Positions 20,033 through 27,350 of a stretch of DNA of 64,000 nucleotides are shown piece after piece; position 1 is the stretch's first letter; the number at the start of each line of letters is the position of its first letter. Source of the stretch: Botryllus schlosseri (Eukaryota); the NCBI GenBank assembly GCA_051294905.1, contig CM119378.1:3286001-3350000 (forward strand), in the 5' to 3' direction. A program made the position numbers and the translations under genes. The notes under the pieces are model-generated. The model did no database searches. It saw only the letters and a program-made list of their open reading frames with translations, and was not told the origin of the DNA.

Positions 20033-21166
20033 GTTGTGACCTATCTTAATCATTTATATTTACACATATTCTCTTATGAGCATGTGCAGCATTGGTAAAA
20101 AATTATATGATACTAAGAGTGTCCATGCAATGTCCACCATTGACCAGCCAGAATTAACACATCCACATATGGTAGATAACGGAGCGTTTCCGGCAATAGG
20201 CCATGCTCTCCGTTCCGGATCCGCAATGTGACCACAATGTGCAATTGAGAACATAATAAATCCATTATGTCGGTGAAACAGCTTGTCTTAACAACACCCC
20301 ACGCTCTTTACAATACGTTAATGATAACCAGCTGGACGGCCTGAACAAATCAACGAGGTTCCAGGTTGGAAGTACATATGATATAACCCTTTAATTTCAT
20401 CATTTTGTCAAATAAATAGGTGGATCAATGACTCTGCCAAATACTCTATGCTTCTGACATTACACGAATCAGTTGGACATAAGAAATCAAATATCCACGA
20501 CTCTACAGCTCCAGACATGAGGACACGGATGTCAAGTCACACGAACGCGACGCTGTAGAAGGCCACGTACATAGATCAGCTGGTCGTGTGCTCCAAATTT
20601 CACGAGAATAATGAGCCTGCCAACGCCGGGCACTTGTCGAAAAAGTATACGTTGAGGCAATATCGCGATCGATAATCTCGACACCAACGGACGTGTCTTT
20701 ACGCGAATTTTTAAGCGTCGATGATCCTTGTGTGGCACCAAGTACGCTATTGACCGTGCGCTCAGTCATTACTGAAAAACGCCACATGAACCGTAACGTC
20801 ACGAAACTGATTGCATGTTACGTTTTGATTGGTCCAACGTATCTTTCTCTGTATTTTCCGGGACTAAAGGGGCATGATTCGACTTTTGGGGTCTTTTTAA
20901 ACGGGGCTTTCACAGCGACAAGATCAAATTTTGTAACGAGTCAAGACTGGAATTAAGGATAAGGTGGGTACAGAAAACAAAAGACGAAAATCTGTATGCC
21001 TAAATTCGAGTAGAGATATACGAAGTGTTGTCAAGGTGTTAAATGTAGGCAAAAGAATGAAGTAAGCCATTGCAAGCAAGCTACTGAATTCGGACTTATG
21101 TTTGCATCGTTTGCATCCGGCGCGAGCCGGAGATTGTAACTTCTCTTTTTATTGTTCTTAGGAATC

Positions 21167-24100
21167 ATGAACCGAATTATTGTGGCTTTACTTCTTGGGT
21201 TTACCCTTTTGACTATTCACATGGCAAACGCACAGGACGGAGAAGCGTGAGTGTTGTTACTTCCTACCAATTACGTTTAATAGTCACCGGATCATGTACA
21301 ATGAACATTGGTCATTATATCAGTAAATCCGCTAGCGTGATAAGGTTTTTAATGGTGTCAACGTATGTTGTCAACTAGTGTGATTCTCTCGTCGATTTTG
21401 ATATAATGTCCTCGTAAGGGATCATAGAGTTCCTAAAACGCGAAAGATTATTATAATTTATTAACGATTTCCAACAAATAAGATACGAACGCGCCCAACG
21501 GAGATTAGCGGTCTTTTATATCGTTCATCCTTTATCGTTTATAGTTGGCTCAACTGATAAATTTAGGATTGCTGATAATTTTGATGATATCAATTGGCAA
21601 ATTGGTGAAATTTATCAGGTGGTAAATGTAGCTAGACACCAAGTATCGTTACAAGTTATAGGGCATAGCAACTGGTGAACGTAGATAGTGTGTCTTCCTG
21701 ATATCGTTGGAAAGGGCTGAATACCAGTGTCAATGATGCTTTTTACAGGAAAATATTACATCAACATATAAAATTTGGATAGGCCCCTGTCCACATTACT
21801 ATGTATTTGCTCATTACCGAAAGCCAAATATTATATTTGAAAAACTTTCCCCTTACTTGCAGAGAGGAAGCGACTGTGGAAGTCGGTACGAATGCACGTT
21901 TGATTTTGTCATCGCATGTTTGCATCTCGTATAATATGCATGGGGATATATATCTTAATTCATCTCATATCGCATGTAGCATTCCTGTTTACTAAACATA
22001 TAGGATTTTTCAAATCTTTCTAATGAGATTTAGGATCGTCGCATTTATTCCTTATATTCTTCATGTTCATACAGTTATAATCATCTTTCAACATTCCACA
22101 TAGATGTTTTGCTCGCTTCGACGTACCATTTTAGCGTTGAACACAGATCATCATCGTTATTAACAATATTCATGCTGCTTTCACCATTTCATTTCATCAA
22201 ATCCCGCGCTACCACACCATTCGTCGATTGAGCAGTGTTGCTAAACGCTTATCGTCGTATTGGGCCGGACGTGCAAGACAGCATCGCGCCATCAAAACAC
22301 ACCAAGCTCTCTTGAATAGAAGGAGACGCGCTAGAAGAGCCAGGTCCCTCCCACCATGGATCAAGTACAGTAAGGAGAAATAAGGCTTTTGACCAATCGC
22401 GTAATTTCTAGCCAATCTGCCCAGCCCTATTATCAAATTGCAGACACCAGAAATTTCGGCTCTATGATAATTACGGTTCTTGCCATCTTAACAAGGGATC
22501 AATAGTCTAAGAATCGATACAGCGAGCTAATTGAAAGTGCTGAGAATATTAAAACTGATGAAAGTCCTTGTGATTTATTGCTAAATTTGTATAACATCCA
22601 GATGTGGTCAATGCAGTTGTCGTTGGCACTCAAATAAAAGTGTCATCGTAAATTTCTACTCATGCACAAGTCGAAGTAGCGTTTCCCAAGTAAGTAAATA
22701 CGGAAGTATTCTAGGCTTAGTTTTACCTGAAAAATAAAAACTTTTGGAAGGAAGTGGAAGTTCTTGGAAACACTGAAGAGTAGGCAAAACCTACTCAAGT
22801 ATTCCGAAGTACGTCGTTAATGACCACACCTGCTAATATGCCTTCCAAGTTTGCTTCTGTATAAATATGTAATATGGAAACCGGGACCGTCGCCAATGTA
22901 CCTCACTAACCGCTATAGTCGAGAGATTACCATTTCAAAGACAGCAATAAGATATTCAACTGGTAGATTTTATTTTGTAGTCTCGCCTCACTGCTTCGCC
23001 TTACGTCATGTCCGTCATCATCATCATCACCTGAAACCGTAGTCTGGTAAAGTACACATCTCATCGAATCGGCATCCGATGCACACCATCGGCATCATTT
23101 CGGAAATATTATCATCATTCCATCCGTCTTTCATGTCCTCGTGCACTATTCTCCGTGAAGTATCTCAATATTCGCATATGACTCAAATTAGCAACGACGA
23201 AAACATGGATTTCCATTCGAATCGGATCTTTCATCAATTGTGATAGAGTACCGGTACAAGGAAGGTAGCCGGCACTTGACAACACATAACGAGACCTTGC
23301 TTGTTTCGGACAATATGATTAAATATCAAGTGGGTTAGTGTCACTCCGATGTATTGGTATTTATATACGGGACTCAAATCGTGATGCAAAAGGCCTTTGA
23401 TGATAGCAAGTTTCACTCCAGTGGCTAATTAAAAAACATCAGTGTCGATTCTATTCTGTATTCGAACGTACGGCAAAGAATAGTGCACGGTAACAGAGAG
23501 ACCCGATATGGAGTAACAGAAAGCGCTCAAATATGACTTCTATGATGATGATGATGGCAGAGGCTGAAGCTCCAGCGGATGACGAAGGCGAAGCAGTTCC
23601 GACTGAAGGAGAAGGCGAAGGGGTTGAACTAACGACTGAGGGTGATGAATCTGATTCAGAGCAACCGGGAGCTAACGGACAGAGGACTCTCACTTTGGAA
23701 GATATGAAACTGTGGTCGAGCATTGATCTTGACAAGAACGGAAAACTCACCATTGCAGAATTCGACAGGTATTTTTGAAGATATTTTAAGCAATATTGGG
23801 GATACTTATCGCGTCCTGAAATTCGTCAGGCTTCCCGCAAACGAACCTTCGAAGTTGGTGGGGTGATACTTTAAGTAAGCTGATGTCAGCTGTAGTATGA
23901 AATGTCAATCTAGCGATTATCGAGAACTCAGTTTCTTGCATATACTCTTGAGGTCCGACTATTTCAAGAACGCCGATCGTCTGAATAAAAACTAGCGACA
24001 ACCTGATGACTCTGGAATAATCCTCGTGCGAAATCTTATCCAACGTTGTGCGCCACGATTGACAGTTTTAATCAGACAACTGGCATTCTCGCGGATAAGC

Positions 24101-26221
24101 TAACTTTATGATCCTCGCTCTACACTAGCTGAAGAGAAAGAATATCTTTCCTAAATGCAGACAAAATGTAAATGCGAATGAGTCTTGAAAATTAGGATAA
24201 TTCAAAACGGTTTTATTGCAGTCTCTTACTAATGAACGATGGTGTAACTAGCGGGAATATATTAATGTTGCACTACGCAAGGAATTATTTCGTTGCTAGC
24301 TACATTTTTTAATGCGACTTATCTTCTCTGGACAGATTCATTCGATCACCAAGTGCCAGAGCATTTGTCAACCAAATGAAGAGCGAAAAAGCCGTGAAAC
24401 AATGGGCTGATAGTAAGTAGTCGTGTAAAATATCAATCGTTGCGTCCCCGTCCGTGCTGACGGCCTTAGGAATTCGATGACCTGTGTTGCGTCTCCAGTT
24501 CGGTACGTGGCACACCCGGACACATATCCAGTATGACTGTGCGCTACAGCAAGCAGATGCTACTCATCATGTACTTGAACGCGGACCGTGCCACTTCACA
24601 CTAGCCACTACTTATCAGCAATATTTACAATACGATACATAGTTGAGTAAAACGAATAGGCTATATGTTACAGACAGATATGTCGCCAAAACTAGATGAA
24701 TACAACTTCCCATAAATAATACAACTATATAATCCAGTTGGTACAAGAGCAATTCAGCACAGATATGGACAACTAGATAACTCTGTTAAATATTTCTATG
24801 CTCTAATTTTAATTCTAATGTAATTTCTGGTTCTGAAGAAAATACTACAGGAGAACGGTACAGCGCGAAACGAACCAAGCTTGCTGTACAGACATTTGCC
24901 GTTCTCTTGCTTATCAGAATGAACCGTGATTTGATACGAACTGAACTTGATTCAACTTTCCAGTTTTCGCGAATTCAGTAATTCTAATTCCAATCTACTT
25001 TGGAAGAAACTGCGTAGCTATAACTATAATTATAATCTAATTTGAAAAATAAAATAAAAACTGTAATTGTAATCTAATATGGAAAGCTGAAAGTTTTCTA
25101 GAAGCGCAAATCCGATTGAGCATTGCGTATCCGTAACTGCACGAGTAATTGAAAATATGCGGTGTGATATTTACCGATTCAAATCAATTTGGCACGGGGC
25201 TGTTAAACTAATGCACAGTTGTAAGCAAAACGAGAGAAAACATTCAACTTCTCTTTCCAGAGGTCGGAATTGATGTCGCCAAAGCCAAAGCCGCGATGAG
25301 CATGGGGGCACGGGCACAATTGGTACGAAACCAACGGGCTCAACAGAACGTCCTCAGAAGAAGACAAATGATGCAACATAGAGCGATGCAACAGAGAAGA
25401 ATGCAGCAAGCAAGACGAAACAACTATTTCGCTAACCTCGGAGTAAGTTGAAAGTAACTGCATGCAAGAATAGGGCAAGAATTCCCCGATTAATCCGAAT
25501 TGGAATAATATTGAAGATGACGCGGGGCCTGCCATGAGTTTCGTAGGCCTCTGACTTTCGCTAGTACATACATTATTATTAATAAATATTTGAGGAGGTA
25601 CAGAACTTCAATGTACAAGTGACTAGTATATTCATATTGAAAGATACGCGAATATTTTCGGCTGACACTTGTCAGGGGTGATCCCAGTTGCTGACGATTA
25701 CTCCTGACGAGTGTCAACCGACAATATTCGGGTTGATTTCAATATGAATACATTATATAAAGATATAAAGATTCTGTCTTACCAGCGCTGCGTTATCATA
25801 AATTGGTCGCCATCTTCCGCCATATACATTAGTTGGAAGAGTGAACAAATCGGTCTTTGGTATCCTAATATATTCACCTCTAGATTAGTAAATTGGGGTA
25901 GTAGTGTCATGACATGAGCGTTAACCTACGAAATTTCTACTAGAACGCGTCAATTGTGTGCGTGTCATCAGAAAAGAGCAATACATTGGCTTTTTTAATG
26001 TTCTTCCATAAATCAATTTCAACTATGTATAAATATGTATGCTTTGGCCCATTACGTCCGCGTTTTGGTACCATGGTAGATCGCTAAGAAATTCAGTGGC
26101 CCTTAACATCACGGATAAGCACTGAATATCGACGGTTGTGTGACATGAGTTGATAATGTTGTTTCCATTTCAGCGACAATATTACAGACAAGCATCAAGA
26201 GGCAGACGTGACGAATTATAA
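21167..26221 (+). CDS. uncharacterised secretory-pathway protein: signal peptide, (Arg-rich), acidic block, EF-hand, Arg/Gln/Met-rich tail, C-terminal RDEL
   Basis: Exons built by phase matching: 21167-21246 (MNRIIVALLLGFTLLTIHMANAQDGE); possible 22236-22369; 23520 or 23561-23768 (acidic + DLDKNGKLTIAEF); 24336-24412; 25261-25442; 26174-26221 (RQYYRQASRGRRDEL*). The last three introns are canonical GT-AG and phase-consistent; the junctions between exon 1 and the acidic exon are uncertain. Confidence 0.7.
25589..25765. mobile_element. R1 palindromic MITE (intronic)
   Basis: ggctgacacttgtcagggg / ctcctgacgagtgtcaacc inverted arms. Confidence 0.7.
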
Positions 26222-26600
26222 GAAGCGACAAAGAACCATCCCATTCTTCTAGTAAAGGACTCGATCTTGATATCATAAGTAGTCGGCGGTGTCGTCTGTT
26301 ACGCCATCACTGGAGTCAAATTTTTATGTCGGGAGAGAAGCCCAAACATTATACCGCCGGTCTTGTAACGCTCGTCTTGTAGTCACAGAAAATTGCCAAA
26401 ATACAACAGGAATGGATACTGAATGAGTTCTTAGTTTGATAAATTTGCAATAATTAACGGAGTTGAGCGTATACTCATGCTGTTCAGGCCGCCCGTTGCA
26501 AACAGGCAAGGTTATAACAATCAGTAGTGCACGCACAAAAAGGACCGATACAGTGTGCAGTGTTGAGCTGCTATAGCGAATGACGATTTATACCAGGGGT

Positions 26601-27350
26601 CATAGGCGCTGAACTCAGGTATGCCGCGCATACCTAGGATTCTTTTTGGGTATGCAGCATACTCAGAATTCGGCTAGACCTGTAACTGACTGGCTGGTGA
26701 ATTGATCGATTTAGAATTAAGCAATGTATTTCTTACTGCTGCTGAACACCTAAGCAAATCAGCAGCAATACATTCACGTGCGTAGCAAAACCCGTCCTTT
26801 TGAAATGGCCATTCTGACGCTAATATTCAGTTGCAATTCCGCAAGTCGTATTTTATCAGTGTTGTGCGCGGCCGCGGCCAATTAACGAGAAGCGTGTTTC
26901 CAATTAGCAAGAATAGTTCGTGCACAATGTAACGCAACGCGATCTCGCGCTGAGATGATTCCGAAGTTATTGATTGCCGCGCGCTCTGCAATCGTCACTG
27001 GCCTGATTTATCGCGCCTCCATCAAGCCTCGTTCCGCTGGCTTGAAGAATCGCATCTGGAATAGGCCCAGTGCGCACTATACCGTCGCTGGCCTGCACAC
27101 GATACCATCGTTGGCCTACACAATTGCGTGCGCAATAGGCCTGTTACGAAATATATCATCACTAGCCTAACGATCGCGTCTCGTGCCTAGAATGCTTTGG
27201 CTCTCGATTGTGATTATAGATTGACATCGCGAAACTGACTGACATCGAATGTCCGCAAGCATGTTCGACGCGTGCGTACATGCGTGCTTGATTTCCGCTA
27301 ATACTTGAACAGAACCATCAGAAGATGTGTCTCAAGGCTTATGTTACTAA
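26601..27350. mobile_element. family C repeat, inverted relative to 36325-36870
   Basis: Shared terminus cataggcgctgaactc (reverse complement ends at 36870) and a long shared body. Confidence 0.75.

What the first reader, a model, noticed from the sequence alone, without database searches (positions are those of the whole stretch)
21167..26221. Orphan secretory gene with charge-segregated blocks, one EF-hand and an RDEL end
Seen: a good signal peptide (MNRIIVALLLGFTLLTIHMANA|QD); a very acidic block (AEAPADDEGEAVPTEGEGEGVELTTEGDESDSEQ); a canonical EF-hand loop DLDKNGKLTIAE; a basic Met/Gln/Arg-rich segment (LRRRQMMQHRAMQQRRMQQARRNNYF); and terminal RRDEL. Four consecutive exons join in phase. 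Known: RDEL is a KDEL-receptor ligand, and CREC/MCFD2 proteins are lumenal EF-hand proteins, but they carry paired or multiple EF-hands and lack such basic tails. I do not recognise this architecture. Inference: a lineage-specific Ca2+-binding ER or secretory-granule protein, possibly a precursor cleaved at multibasic sites. The ORF track shows only a fragment of it.
Basis: partly seen in the sequence, partly recalled or inferred. Interest (0 to 1): 0.72.

Follow-up and report, generated by a model that had tools for sequence, protein, structure and literature searches.

The report
Tunicate ER EF-hand protein, charge-switching splicing
This is a real, very highly expressed sea-squirt gene for a small secretory-pathway calcium-binding protein that ends in an ER-retrieval signal. 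Alternative splicing gives it either a strongly basic or a strongly acidic front end, and this switch is kept across tunicates in a family nobody has characterised.

Summary
RNA-seq junctions give a 5'UTR exon plus six coding exons per isoform. They reveal a missed 77-nt exon (24336-24412) and a 23-nt micro-exon (21863-21885).

After the signal peptide there are two mutually exclusive routes:
- **Major isoform A** (209 aa, pI about 11.8) carries an Arg-rich cassette (22236-22369) and skips the acidic block.
- **Minor isoform B** (205 aa, about 25% of junction reads) carries the micro-exon plus the acidic block.

Both isoforms share one canonical EF-hand, a gap-free 84-aa conserved core, an Arg/Gln-rich helix and the ending RRDEL.

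Orthologues exist in Styela clava, Ciona intestinalis, Ciona savignyi, Clavelina lepadiformis and two marine-plankton transcript clades. Named ones are annotated "uncharacterized" or, in C. savignyi, "EF-hand domain-containing protein". All five clades outside the window's own show basic/acidic isoform pairs. All end in KDEL-receptor-compatible or similar tails (RDEL, SDEL, REEL, RTEL, GGEL).

No Pfam family reaches its cutoff. No solved structure, fold match or paper was found beyond the generic EF-hand. It is not a CREC or MCFD2 member.

Best reading: an abundant, tunicate-restricted, Ca2+-binding resident of the ER or early secretory pathway whose net charge is switched by splicing. Its function is unknown. 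A precursor cleaved at basic sites is not excluded.

Another note of this scan (s1-234317) had spotted the basic exon.

The parts
20900..20963 (+). 3' part of a non-coding 5'UTR exon. Its start lies upstream of 20900 and was not mapped.
   Evidence: the joint from about 20963 to 21162 has 1440 reads. Reads run over the left end of the laid stretch; there is an in-frame TAA 9 nt upstream of the ATG and no upstream ATG in the mapped part.
21162..21246 (+). Coding exon 1. ATG at 21167; signal peptide 21167-21232 (22 aa, predicted cleavage ANA|QD); then QDGEA. The exon ends in phase 2.
   Evidence: The hydrophobic core has a mean Kyte-Doolittle value of 2.8 over 14 residues. The same layout is seen in orthologues. 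SignalP was not available.
21863..21885 (+). 23-nt micro-exon (EEATVEV) used only in acidic isoform B.
   Evidence: joints 21246->21863 (380 reads) and 21884/5->23560/1 (361 reads), also seen in contigs of X4 and X8. An equivalent xDDxVEVAxx stretch is present in Styela, Ciona, Clavelina and the plankton clades.
22236..22369 (+). Arg-rich basic cassette exon of major isoform A (VAKRLSSYWAGRARQHRAIKTHQALLNRRRRARRARSLPPWIKY).
   Evidence: joints 21246->22236 (1000 reads) and 22369->23660 (1170 reads), also seen in contigs of X1, X4 and X8. The conserved motifs YWAxxAR and IPPWxxYK appear in orthologues. The same exon lies upstream of the acidic exon in L004.
23561..23659 (+). Acidic block. It is the 5' extension of exon 3 and is included only when the upstream acceptor 23561 is used (isoform B).
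   Evidence: The charge between the signal peptide and the EF-hand entering helix is -19 here and -10 to -16 in full-length acidic isoforms of orthologues.
23660..23768 (+). Common part of exon 3: linker plus the EF-hand entering helix and loop (loop DLDKNGKLTIAE at 23725-23760).
   Evidence: One PROSITE EF-hand pattern match. The family core profile hits EF-hand proteins in the PDB, best E 4.8e-7.
24336..24412 (+). It holds the EF-hand exiting helix and the next conserved helix.
   Evidence: joints 23768->24336 (1693 reads) and 24412->25261 (1479 reads). It is part of the gap-free 84-aa core.
25261..25442 (+). Exon 5: the conserved VGIDVAKAKAAM helix start, then the Arg/Gln/Met-rich basic helix, then NNYFANLG.
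   Evidence: The AF2 model on orthologue P0004 gives a 70-residue helix with pLDDT 76-93.
26174..26423 (+). Last exon: RQYYRQASRGRRDEL, stop TAA at 26219-26221, and the 3'UTR. An AATACA signal lies at 26400-26405 and poly(A) is added at about 26423.
   Evidence: joint 25442->26174 (2049 reads), and a poly(A) loose end at 26423 in X4..

Best explanation
A single-copy, very highly expressed gene on the + strand (about 20900-26423) encodes a small Cys-free protein of the secretory pathway.

**What is shown.**
- Gene structure: a 5'UTR exon plus six coding exons per isoform.
- After the signal-peptide exon, splicing takes one of two exclusive routes.
  - Isoform A: the Arg-rich exon 22236-22369 joins the inner acceptor 23660. 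Cassette charge is +14, mature pI about 11.8.
  - Isoform B: the micro-exon 21863-21885 joins the outer acceptor 23561 and adds the acidic block. Cassette charge is -19, mature pI about 5.7.
- Both isoforms then share one canonical EF-hand inside an 84-aa gap-free conserved core, a long Arg/Gln-rich helix, the conserved NNYFANLGRQYY stretch and RRDEL.
- The family, the basic/acidic isoform pair and an -EL tail are conserved in Styela, Ciona, Clavelina and two plankton clades.

**What is inferred.**
- The signal peptide is cleaved after Ala22.
- The EF-hand binds Ca2+ at lumenal concentrations.
- The RDEL tail is read by the KDEL receptor, so the protein is an abundant resident of the ER or early secretory pathway.
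- The polybasic helices bind polyanionic partners (acidic lumenal proteins, sulfated glycans or membranes).
- The alternative acidic cassette neutralises or competes with that binding. It may also add low-affinity Ca2+ capacity. Splicing would then set the charge and the partner range of one Ca2+-binding scaffold.
For: **Gene model.** Junction reads in raw RNA run X23 and in contigs of three other runs from three studies define the model. The translations end in RRDEL. Frames, the in-frame upstream stop and the poly(A) signal were checked.

**Expression.** 31,681 of 12.9 million sampled records of a bulk RNA run lie on the locus.

**Copy number.** Single copy in the 495.5-Mb genome.

**Purifying selection.** The three coding differences shared by the RNA runs against the assembly are synonymous.

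**Family.** Members were found.
- The 84-aa core aligns without gaps, with 34 invariant columns.
- The tree splits the window, Styela and P0004 from the Ciona, Clavelina and plankton clades.
- Basic and acidic isoforms with the same signal peptide and the same remainder occur in Styela (P0002/P0003), Ciona (P0005/P0006), Clavelina (P0035/P0034), the GGEL clade (for example P0008/P0009) and the RTEL clade (for example P0059/P0058). Cassette charges are +7 to +20 versus -10 to -19.
- The exon order is the same in a second genome.

**EF-hand.** 63 of 65 family sequences have exactly one PROSITE-pattern match. The core profile hits EF-hand chains in the PDB.

**Tail.** RDEL, SDEL and REEL fit the PROSITE ER pattern. 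In PMC2140024, ARDEL and AREEL equal AKDEL for ERD21. RTEL (FKBP2) and PGEL (SUMF2) proteins are ER-localised there, and any residue but Pro works at position -3.
Against: - No localisation, Ca2+-binding or partner data exist for any family member.
- EF-hand Pfam scores stay below the curated cutoffs (17-21 bits against 25-30).
- AF2 models the EF-hand region with low confidence (pLDDT 41-66).
- No second EF-hand was recognised, so how the lone hand is paired is unknown. The homodimer prediction gave no verdict.
- GGEL and AGEL tails (21 sequences) and RTEL tails (24 sequences) do not match the PROSITE ER pattern. ASDEL is leaky in PMC2140024.
- An invariant RR sits just before the tail, and RRRR/RRR sites are conserved. 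This would also suit convertase cleavage.
- The polyanion-binding and charge-masking roles are pure inference from composition.
- The basic helices are not significantly amphipathic.
Confidence: 0.55

Rival explanations
1. It is a secreted or granule-stored precursor. Proprotein convertases would cut it at the conserved multibasic sites: RRRR in the basic cassette, RRR in the C-terminal helix, and RR before the tail. This would release bioactive cationic peptides (hormone-like or antimicrobial). Removal of the -DEL tail would make export irreversible, and the acidic isoform would be a neutralised pro-form.
For: - Dibasic and multibasic sites lie at aa 30, 55-58, 60-61, 166-168, 179-180, 185-186 and 205-206 of isoform A.
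- RRRR in the cassette, RRR in the helix and RR before the tail align across clades.
- G-(x)-RR just before the tail in several clades resembles an amidation/cleavage site.
- Expression is very high.
- An anionic piece next to a cationic piece recalls antimicrobial-peptide precursors. This last point rests on my own knowledge.
Against: - The most conserved segment (the 84-aa EF-hand core) is not flanked by basic sites and looks like a folded domain.
- The Arg/Gln-rich region is variable in sequence between clades, unlike a conserved mature peptide.
- The cationic segments are not more amphipathic than shuffles.
- Anionic and cationic cassettes are alternatives, not parts of one chain.
- Tails in all clades are compatible with or similar to KDEL-receptor ligands. 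A secreted precursor would not need to conserve such a tail.
Confidence: 0.2
2. It is a lumenal Ca2+ sensor rather than a buffer or binder. The lone EF-hand would change the oligomeric state or partner binding when store Ca2+ falls, as in STIM1 and SEPN1. The two isoforms would couple that signal to different targets.
For: - There is a single canonical EF-hand, followed by conserved helices that could act as a hidden partner hand.
- A single lumenal EF-hand that controls oligomerisation is described for SEPN1 (PMC7474598 abstract) and for STIM1 (PMC10400917 abstract).
- P0003 gives a sub-threshold hit to the Pfam STIM1 EF-hand model (E 0.045).
Against: - There is no membrane anchor or effector domain.
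- Very high expression suits a bulk resident better than a sensor.
- The STIM1 hit is far below cutoff (14.3 bits against 32.2).
- The homodimer prediction gave no verdict.
Confidence: 0.12
3. It is a divergent member of a known lumenal EF-hand family (CREC, MCFD2 or nucleobindin) whose kinship the searches missed.
For: - The signal peptide, EF-hand and KDEL-type tail recall CREC proteins.
- The order basic region, EF-hand, helical Gln-rich tail loosely recalls nucleobindin. This is from my own knowledge and was not tested by alignment.
- The protein searches only saw candidates of 0.55-1.75 times the query length.
- My one exhaustive search used only the 60-aa exon 5.
Against: - There is one EF-hand, not two or six.
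- The profile search found only family members down to E = 1.
- In the core-profile search of the PDB, only the EF-hand positions matched EF-hand proteins; the few weak rows over later positions (E 0.05 or worse) were unrelated proteins. No CREC, MCFD2 or nucleobindin chain was among the 60 best.
- There were no fold matches.
- The atlas gave only generic EF-hand clusters at 0.81 or lower.
Confidence: 0.05

Closest known systems
CREC family (reticulocalbin, calumenin, ERC-55, Cab45)
   Same: Cleaved signal peptide, EF-hand Ca2+ binding in the secretory pathway, few or no cysteines, and a C-terminal KDEL-type tail in several members.
   Different: CREC proteins have six or seven EF-hands and are acidic. 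This protein has one EF-hand and polybasic helices. No sequence similarity outside the loop was detected.
MCFD2
   Same: A small soluble lumenal EF-hand protein with a signal peptide.
   Different: MCFD2 has a pair of EF-hands and no retrieval tail or basic helices. No similarity was found. The MCFD2 features are from my own knowledge.
KDEL-receptor clients with variant tails (FKBP2 RTEL, SUMF2 PGEL, MANF/ARMET RTDL)
   Same: Soluble lumenal proteins kept in the ER by [R/K/x]-x-E-L tails. The family's RDEL, REEL and RTEL tails, and the GGEL-like tail, fall within or near the variants shown to work in PMC2140024.
   Different: The body of the protein is unrelated. GGEL itself was not found in the main text of that paper.
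Lumenal single-EF-hand sensors (STIM1 EF-SAM, SEPN1)
   Same: One canonical EF-hand faces the ER lumen, possibly with a non-canonical partner helix pair.
   Different: Those proteins are membrane-anchored and have effector domains. This one is soluble, tiny and extremely abundant.
RAP (LRPAP1), the ER escort chaperone
   Same: A soluble, helical, basic, Cys-poor ER resident with an HNEL tail that binds acidic Ca2+-binding receptor modules. It is a functional analogy for a polybasic lumenal binder. The RAP features are from my own knowledge.
   Different: No sequence or fold relation was tested or seen. RAP has no EF-hand and no charge-switching isoforms.

Membership tests
   DLDKNGKLTIAEF matches once in the window protein and once in 63 of 65 family sequences. 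The loop is invariant or conservative in all clades.
EF-hand Ca2+-binding motif | A Pfam EF-hand model scored above its gathering cutoff. | tested here: not met
   The best scores are 17-21 bits against cutoffs of 25-30. The family core profile does hit EF-hand chains in the PDB at E 4.8e-7.
EF-hand Ca2+-binding motif | Hands occur in pairs, so a second canonical or pseudo hand should be in the same chain. | tested here: inconclusive
   There is no second pattern match. The two conserved helices after the hand are joined by a 3-residue turn in low-confidence AF2 models. The homodimer test gave no verdict.
CREC family | Six or seven EF-hands and detectable sequence homology. | tested here: not met
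   There is one EF-hand. Only family members were found down to E = 1. No CREC chain was among the PDB profile hits.
MCFD2 | Two EF-hands in a protein of about 146 aa, with homology. | tested here: not met
   There is one EF-hand and no homology hit.
Soluble ER residents retrieved by the KDEL receptor | The C-terminal tetrapeptide fits [KRHQSA]-[DENQ]-E-L or a variant shown to work. | tested here: met
   RDEL in the window. In PMC2140024, ARDEL is not different from AKDEL for ERD21. Other clades carry SDEL, REEL and RTEL (working variants) and GGEL/AGEL (untested; PGEL works).
Soluble ER residents retrieved by the KDEL receptor | A cleavable N-terminal signal peptide and no membrane anchor. 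| tested here: met
   n-region with Arg, a 14-residue hydrophobic core (mean KD 2.8) and A-x-A before the cut. The layout is conserved in orthologues. No other hydrophobic stretch is present. SignalP was not available.
Soluble ER residents retrieved by the KDEL receptor | Observed ER localisation that depends on the tail. | not testable with these tools
   This needs tagged expression with and without RDEL.
Prohormone or antimicrobial-peptide precursor | Conserved mature peptides bounded by basic cleavage sites, and for antimicrobial peptides an amphipathic cationic helix. | tested here: inconclusive
   Basic sites are conserved. However, the best-conserved core is not bounded by them, and the cationic segments are not more amphipathic than shuffles.

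The most novel reading that the evidence does not exclude
One gene makes a polycation and a matching polyanion on the same Ca2+-binding scaffold. The basic isoform would bind and escort polyanionic cargo or membranes in the early secretory pathway. The acidic isoform would act as its built-in competitor or partner, either as an intramolecular mask of the basic C-terminal helix or by pairing in trans, under Ca2+ control. This would be a tunicate-specific, splicing-tuned electrostatic chaperone or condensate system. The coupling of upstream exon choice to acceptor choice is not explained by reading frame, so it would need its own mechanism.
Probability: 0.15. Interest if true: 0.75.

Novelty: new variant of a known kind. 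Interest (0 to 1): 0.55.

Why it matters
- **Abundance and range.** The protein accounts for about 0.25% of the sampled reads in one bulk RNA run. It occurs in all three ascidian orders, yet it has no name, no Pfam family and no paper.
- **The isoform switch.** One gene yields a pI of about 11.8 or about 5.7 on an otherwise identical Ca2+-binding body. The switch is conserved across the family and is not enforced by reading frame. That poses a clear, testable splicing and cell-biology question in Ciona, where electroporation and CRISPR are routine.
- **Annotation.** The corrected exon model fixes a gene that ORF-based reading misassembles.

Tried and rejected
- **No reference for the spliced protein.** The window's own spliced protein has no reference, so I could not submit it whole. 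I searched exon pieces and used orthologue P0004 (63-66% identical) for folding.
- **Exhaustive HMMER search** with the 60-aa exon 5 found only one true relative (P0002) and one repeat-protein artefact (P0001).
- **Pfam** on the pieces and on eight orthologues gave only sub-threshold EF-hand hits and noise such as GST_C_3, DUF7405 and DUF436.
- **PDB sequence search** with one protein gave nothing at E below 0.05.
- **ESM Atlas** gave only generic EF-hand clusters, at 0.91 or lower for the piece and 0.81 or lower for Ciona X1.
- **AF2 models** were mediocre (pLDDT 69.5 and 62.3). Foldseek against AFDB clusters and the PDB gave no match with E of 0.1 or better.
- **Complex prediction** on two copies of residues 76-218 gave no verdict, so it is neither support nor evidence against dimerisation.
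- **INP[FY]LQ insert.** I looked for the optional 6-aa insert seen in Ciona, Clavelina and plankton isoforms. No such micro-exon exists in intron 25443-26173.
- **Amphipathic-helix test** of the cationic segments was not different from shuffles.
- **The look-up of encoding contigs** failed for the NCBI isoforms of Styela and Clavelina, and gave no DNA for P0027.
- **Literature searches** by locus names and by topic found nothing on this family.
- **Splicing hairpin.** I considered a conserved RNA hairpin as the splicing switch. It is present in the window but was not found in the orthologous locus L004, so I keep it only as a lead.


Full report
**1. Observation.**
- Signal peptide MNRIIVALLLGFTLLTIHMANA|QD, from the ATG at 21167.
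- The acidic block, within 23561-23659.
- The EF-hand loop DLDKNGKLTIAE, at 23725-23760.
- The Met/Gln/Arg-rich basic segment, within 25261-25442.
- RRDEL followed by TAA, at 26204-26221.

The stated joining of four exons in phase does not hold.
- Exon 1 ends at 21246 in phase 2, next to a GTGAGT donor. Joining it directly to the acidic block shifts the frame and gives a stop at codon 29.
- The EF-hand exon ends at 23768 in phase 2. The acceptor at 25261 needs one base from the exon before it.

**2. Real gene model.** I laid one bulk RNA run (X23, raw reads) and the contigs of three older runs from three studies on 20900-26800. Well-supported GT..AG junctions give this model:
- a 5'UTR exon ending at 20963, joined to 21162 (1440 reads);
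- exon 1, 21162-21246;
- route A: 21246->22236 (1000 reads) and 22369->23660 (1170 reads);
- or route B: 21246->21863 (380 reads) and 21885->23561 (361 reads);
- then 23768->24336 (1693 reads), 24412->25261 (1479 reads) and 25442->26174 (2049 reads);
- poly(A) at about 26423, behind an AATACA signal.

Bin depths fit the exons only. The 134-nt Arg-rich exon (22236-22369) was noted separately in this scan (s1-234317).

An in-frame TAA lies 9 nt upstream of the ATG in the spliced 5'UTR.

Translations:
- Isoform A is 209 aa. Its mature part has pI 11.8 and no Cys.
- Isoform B is 205 aa, with pI 5.7.

In X23 the acidic isoform B takes about a quarter of the junction reads. Both forms are present in the contig runs.

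The cross-combinations (micro-exon to 23660, and basic exon to 23561) would both stay in frame. They were not among the listed joints. Joints with about 9 reads were listed, but 36 weaker ones were not shown. So the two cassettes are mutually exclusive in practice, and frame or NMD does not enforce this.

About 31,700 of 12.9 million sampled records of X23 lie on the locus, so expression is very high. The three coding differences that the RNA runs share against the assembly are synonymous. The non-synonymous differences seen in one run fall in the acidic block. The gene is single-copy in the 495.5-Mb genome.

**3. Relatives.** The spliced protein has no reference, so I searched exon by exon.
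- The exhaustive search with exon 5 found Styela clava LOC120331636 (P0002).
- From there, word-indexed searches with P0002, with a family alignment and with the C-terminal half of Ciona X1 found 63 family sequences:
  - Styela clava (P0002, P0003);
  - an unnamed Logan transcript (P0004, 63-66% identical to the window pieces);
  - Ciona intestinalis LOC100186118 (P0005, P0006);
  - Ciona savignyi H2Z3F7 (P0016);
  - Clavelina lepadiformis LOC143463518 (P0034, P0035);
  - genomic exon fragments from other ascidians (P0027-P0031);
  - two clades from marine metatranscriptomes, ending RRGGEL and RRRTEL.
- Named records are "uncharacterized protein" or, for C. savignyi, "EF-hand domain-containing protein".
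- A tree of the common region separates the window, Styela and P0004 from the Ciona, Clavelina and two plankton clades. The plankton clades are unassigned. Pelagic tunicates are my guess, and I did not test it.
- No hit outside the family appeared down to E = 1. The length window of that tool and my use of a short query in the exhaustive search leave longer kin untested.

**4. Conserved anatomy.**
- An 84-aa core, from xPNxxG to GAxAQ, aligns without a single gap. It has 34 invariant columns.
- It holds the one EF-hand. There is exactly one PROSITE-pattern match in 63 of 65 sequences.
- The EF-hand is followed by RSPxAxxFVxxMKxxKAxxxWAxKxGIDxxKAKxAM.
- Then comes a variable Arg/Gln-rich stretch of about 50 aa, the conserved NxYWxxLG...QYY stretch, and RR plus a short -EL tail.
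- In every other clade there are pairs of sequences with the same signal peptide and the same remainder but different cassettes. One has a basic cassette (charge +7 to +20, with the motifs YWAxxAR and IPPWxxYK). The other has an acidic one (charge -10 to -19, beginning with a micro-exon-like xDDxVEVAxx).
- A genomic contig of another ascidian (L004) has the same exon order: basic exon, acidic+EF exon, 77-nt-type exon, helix exon, RRDEL exon.
- The charge switch is therefore old and maintained.

**5. Comparison with known families.**
- No Pfam model reaches its cutoff. EF-hand models score 17-21 bits.
- The core profile hits EF-hand proteins in the PDB only over the hand (best E 4.8e-7). A single-sequence search finds nothing significant.
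- AF2 on P0004 with the family alignment gives long helices: the basic cassette (residues 25-67) and a 70-residue C-terminal helix (pLDDT 76-93). The EF-hand is poorly defined. The core alone gives pLDDT 62.
- Foldseek against AFDB clusters and the PDB, and the ESM Atlas, give nothing beyond generic EF-hand leads.
- The protein fails the CREC and MCFD2 membership tests because it has one hand and no homology.
- Five literature searches found no paper on the family.

**6. The tail.**
- RDEL, SDEL and REEL fit the PROSITE ER pattern. RTEL, GGEL and AGEL do not.
- In Raykhel et al. 2007 (PMC2140024), ARDEL and AREEL are not different from AKDEL for ERD21.
- In the same paper, any residue but Pro works at position -3, FKBP2 (RTEL) and SUMF2 (PGEL) are ER proteins, and ASDEL is leaky.
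- Every clade thus keeps a tail that is a known or plausible KDEL-receptor ligand. This is the main reason I favour residency in the ER or early secretory pathway.

**7. Mechanism.**
- *Shown:* the gene model, the two isoforms, their abundance, and the conservation of the cassette pair, the EF-hand and the tail.
- *Inferred:* signal-peptide cleavage, Ca2+ occupancy in the lumen, and KDEL-receptor retrieval.
- *Also inferred:* the polybasic helices bind polyanionic partners, and the acidic cassette neutralises them or adds low-affinity Ca2+ sites.
- *Rivals:* a convertase-cleaved precursor (the conserved RRRR, RRR and RR sites fit it); a lumenal Ca2+ sensor in the manner of STIM1 or SEPN1; and an undetected link to a known family.
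- The homodimer prediction gave no verdict.
- The cationic segments are not more amphipathic than shuffles.

**8. Verdict.**
- This is an uncharacterised, tunicate-restricted (as far as the searches see) variant of the lumenal EF-hand/KDEL-tail theme, with a conserved charge-reversing splice switch.
- Interest is moderate to high for tunicate and secretory-pathway biologists. The function remains open.

Noticed in passing
window 22990-23152 and 23477-23597: Three nested inverted-repeat pairs lie in the intron before exon 3: 13 nt perfect, 19 nt at 89%, and 13 nt perfect. Their 3' arms cover the upstream acceptor AG (23559-23560) and the first codons of the acidic block. The MFE fold of 22985-23602 pairs these arms (-182 kcal/mol, z = -5.3 against 20 shuffles). 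This may be a switch for acceptor choice, but no counterpart was found in the orthologous locus L004.
   Followed up: partly
window 25640-25760 (intron 5): A short palindromic dispersed repeat with 82 scored matches out of 1895 candidates across the chromosomes of G000. It explains the very high contig depth at 25628-25824 in X1, X4 and X8 while raw RNA reads of X23 barely cover it.
   Followed up: partly
window 24643-25036 (intron 4): Contigs of X1 and X4 cover this intronic stretch at depth 90-420, with odd non-canonical joints, while X23 raw reads give depth below 4. It is probably another repeat expressed from elsewhere.
   Followed up: no
orthologues P0005, P0021, P0023, P0024, P0034 and others: Some isoforms carry an optional 6-aa insert, INP[FY][LM]Q, exactly at the exon 5/6 boundary (LG|QQYY). 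This is a second conserved alternative event in Ciona, Clavelina and the plankton clades. No such micro-exon exists in the window's intron 25443-26173.
   Followed up: yes
window 23598, 23602, 23624: Run X1 carries three linked differences in the acidic block. Two of them are non-synonymous (T49A, V56G in isoform B). All differences shared by the runs elsewhere in the coding sequence are synonymous, so the acidic block is the least constrained part.
   Followed up: yes
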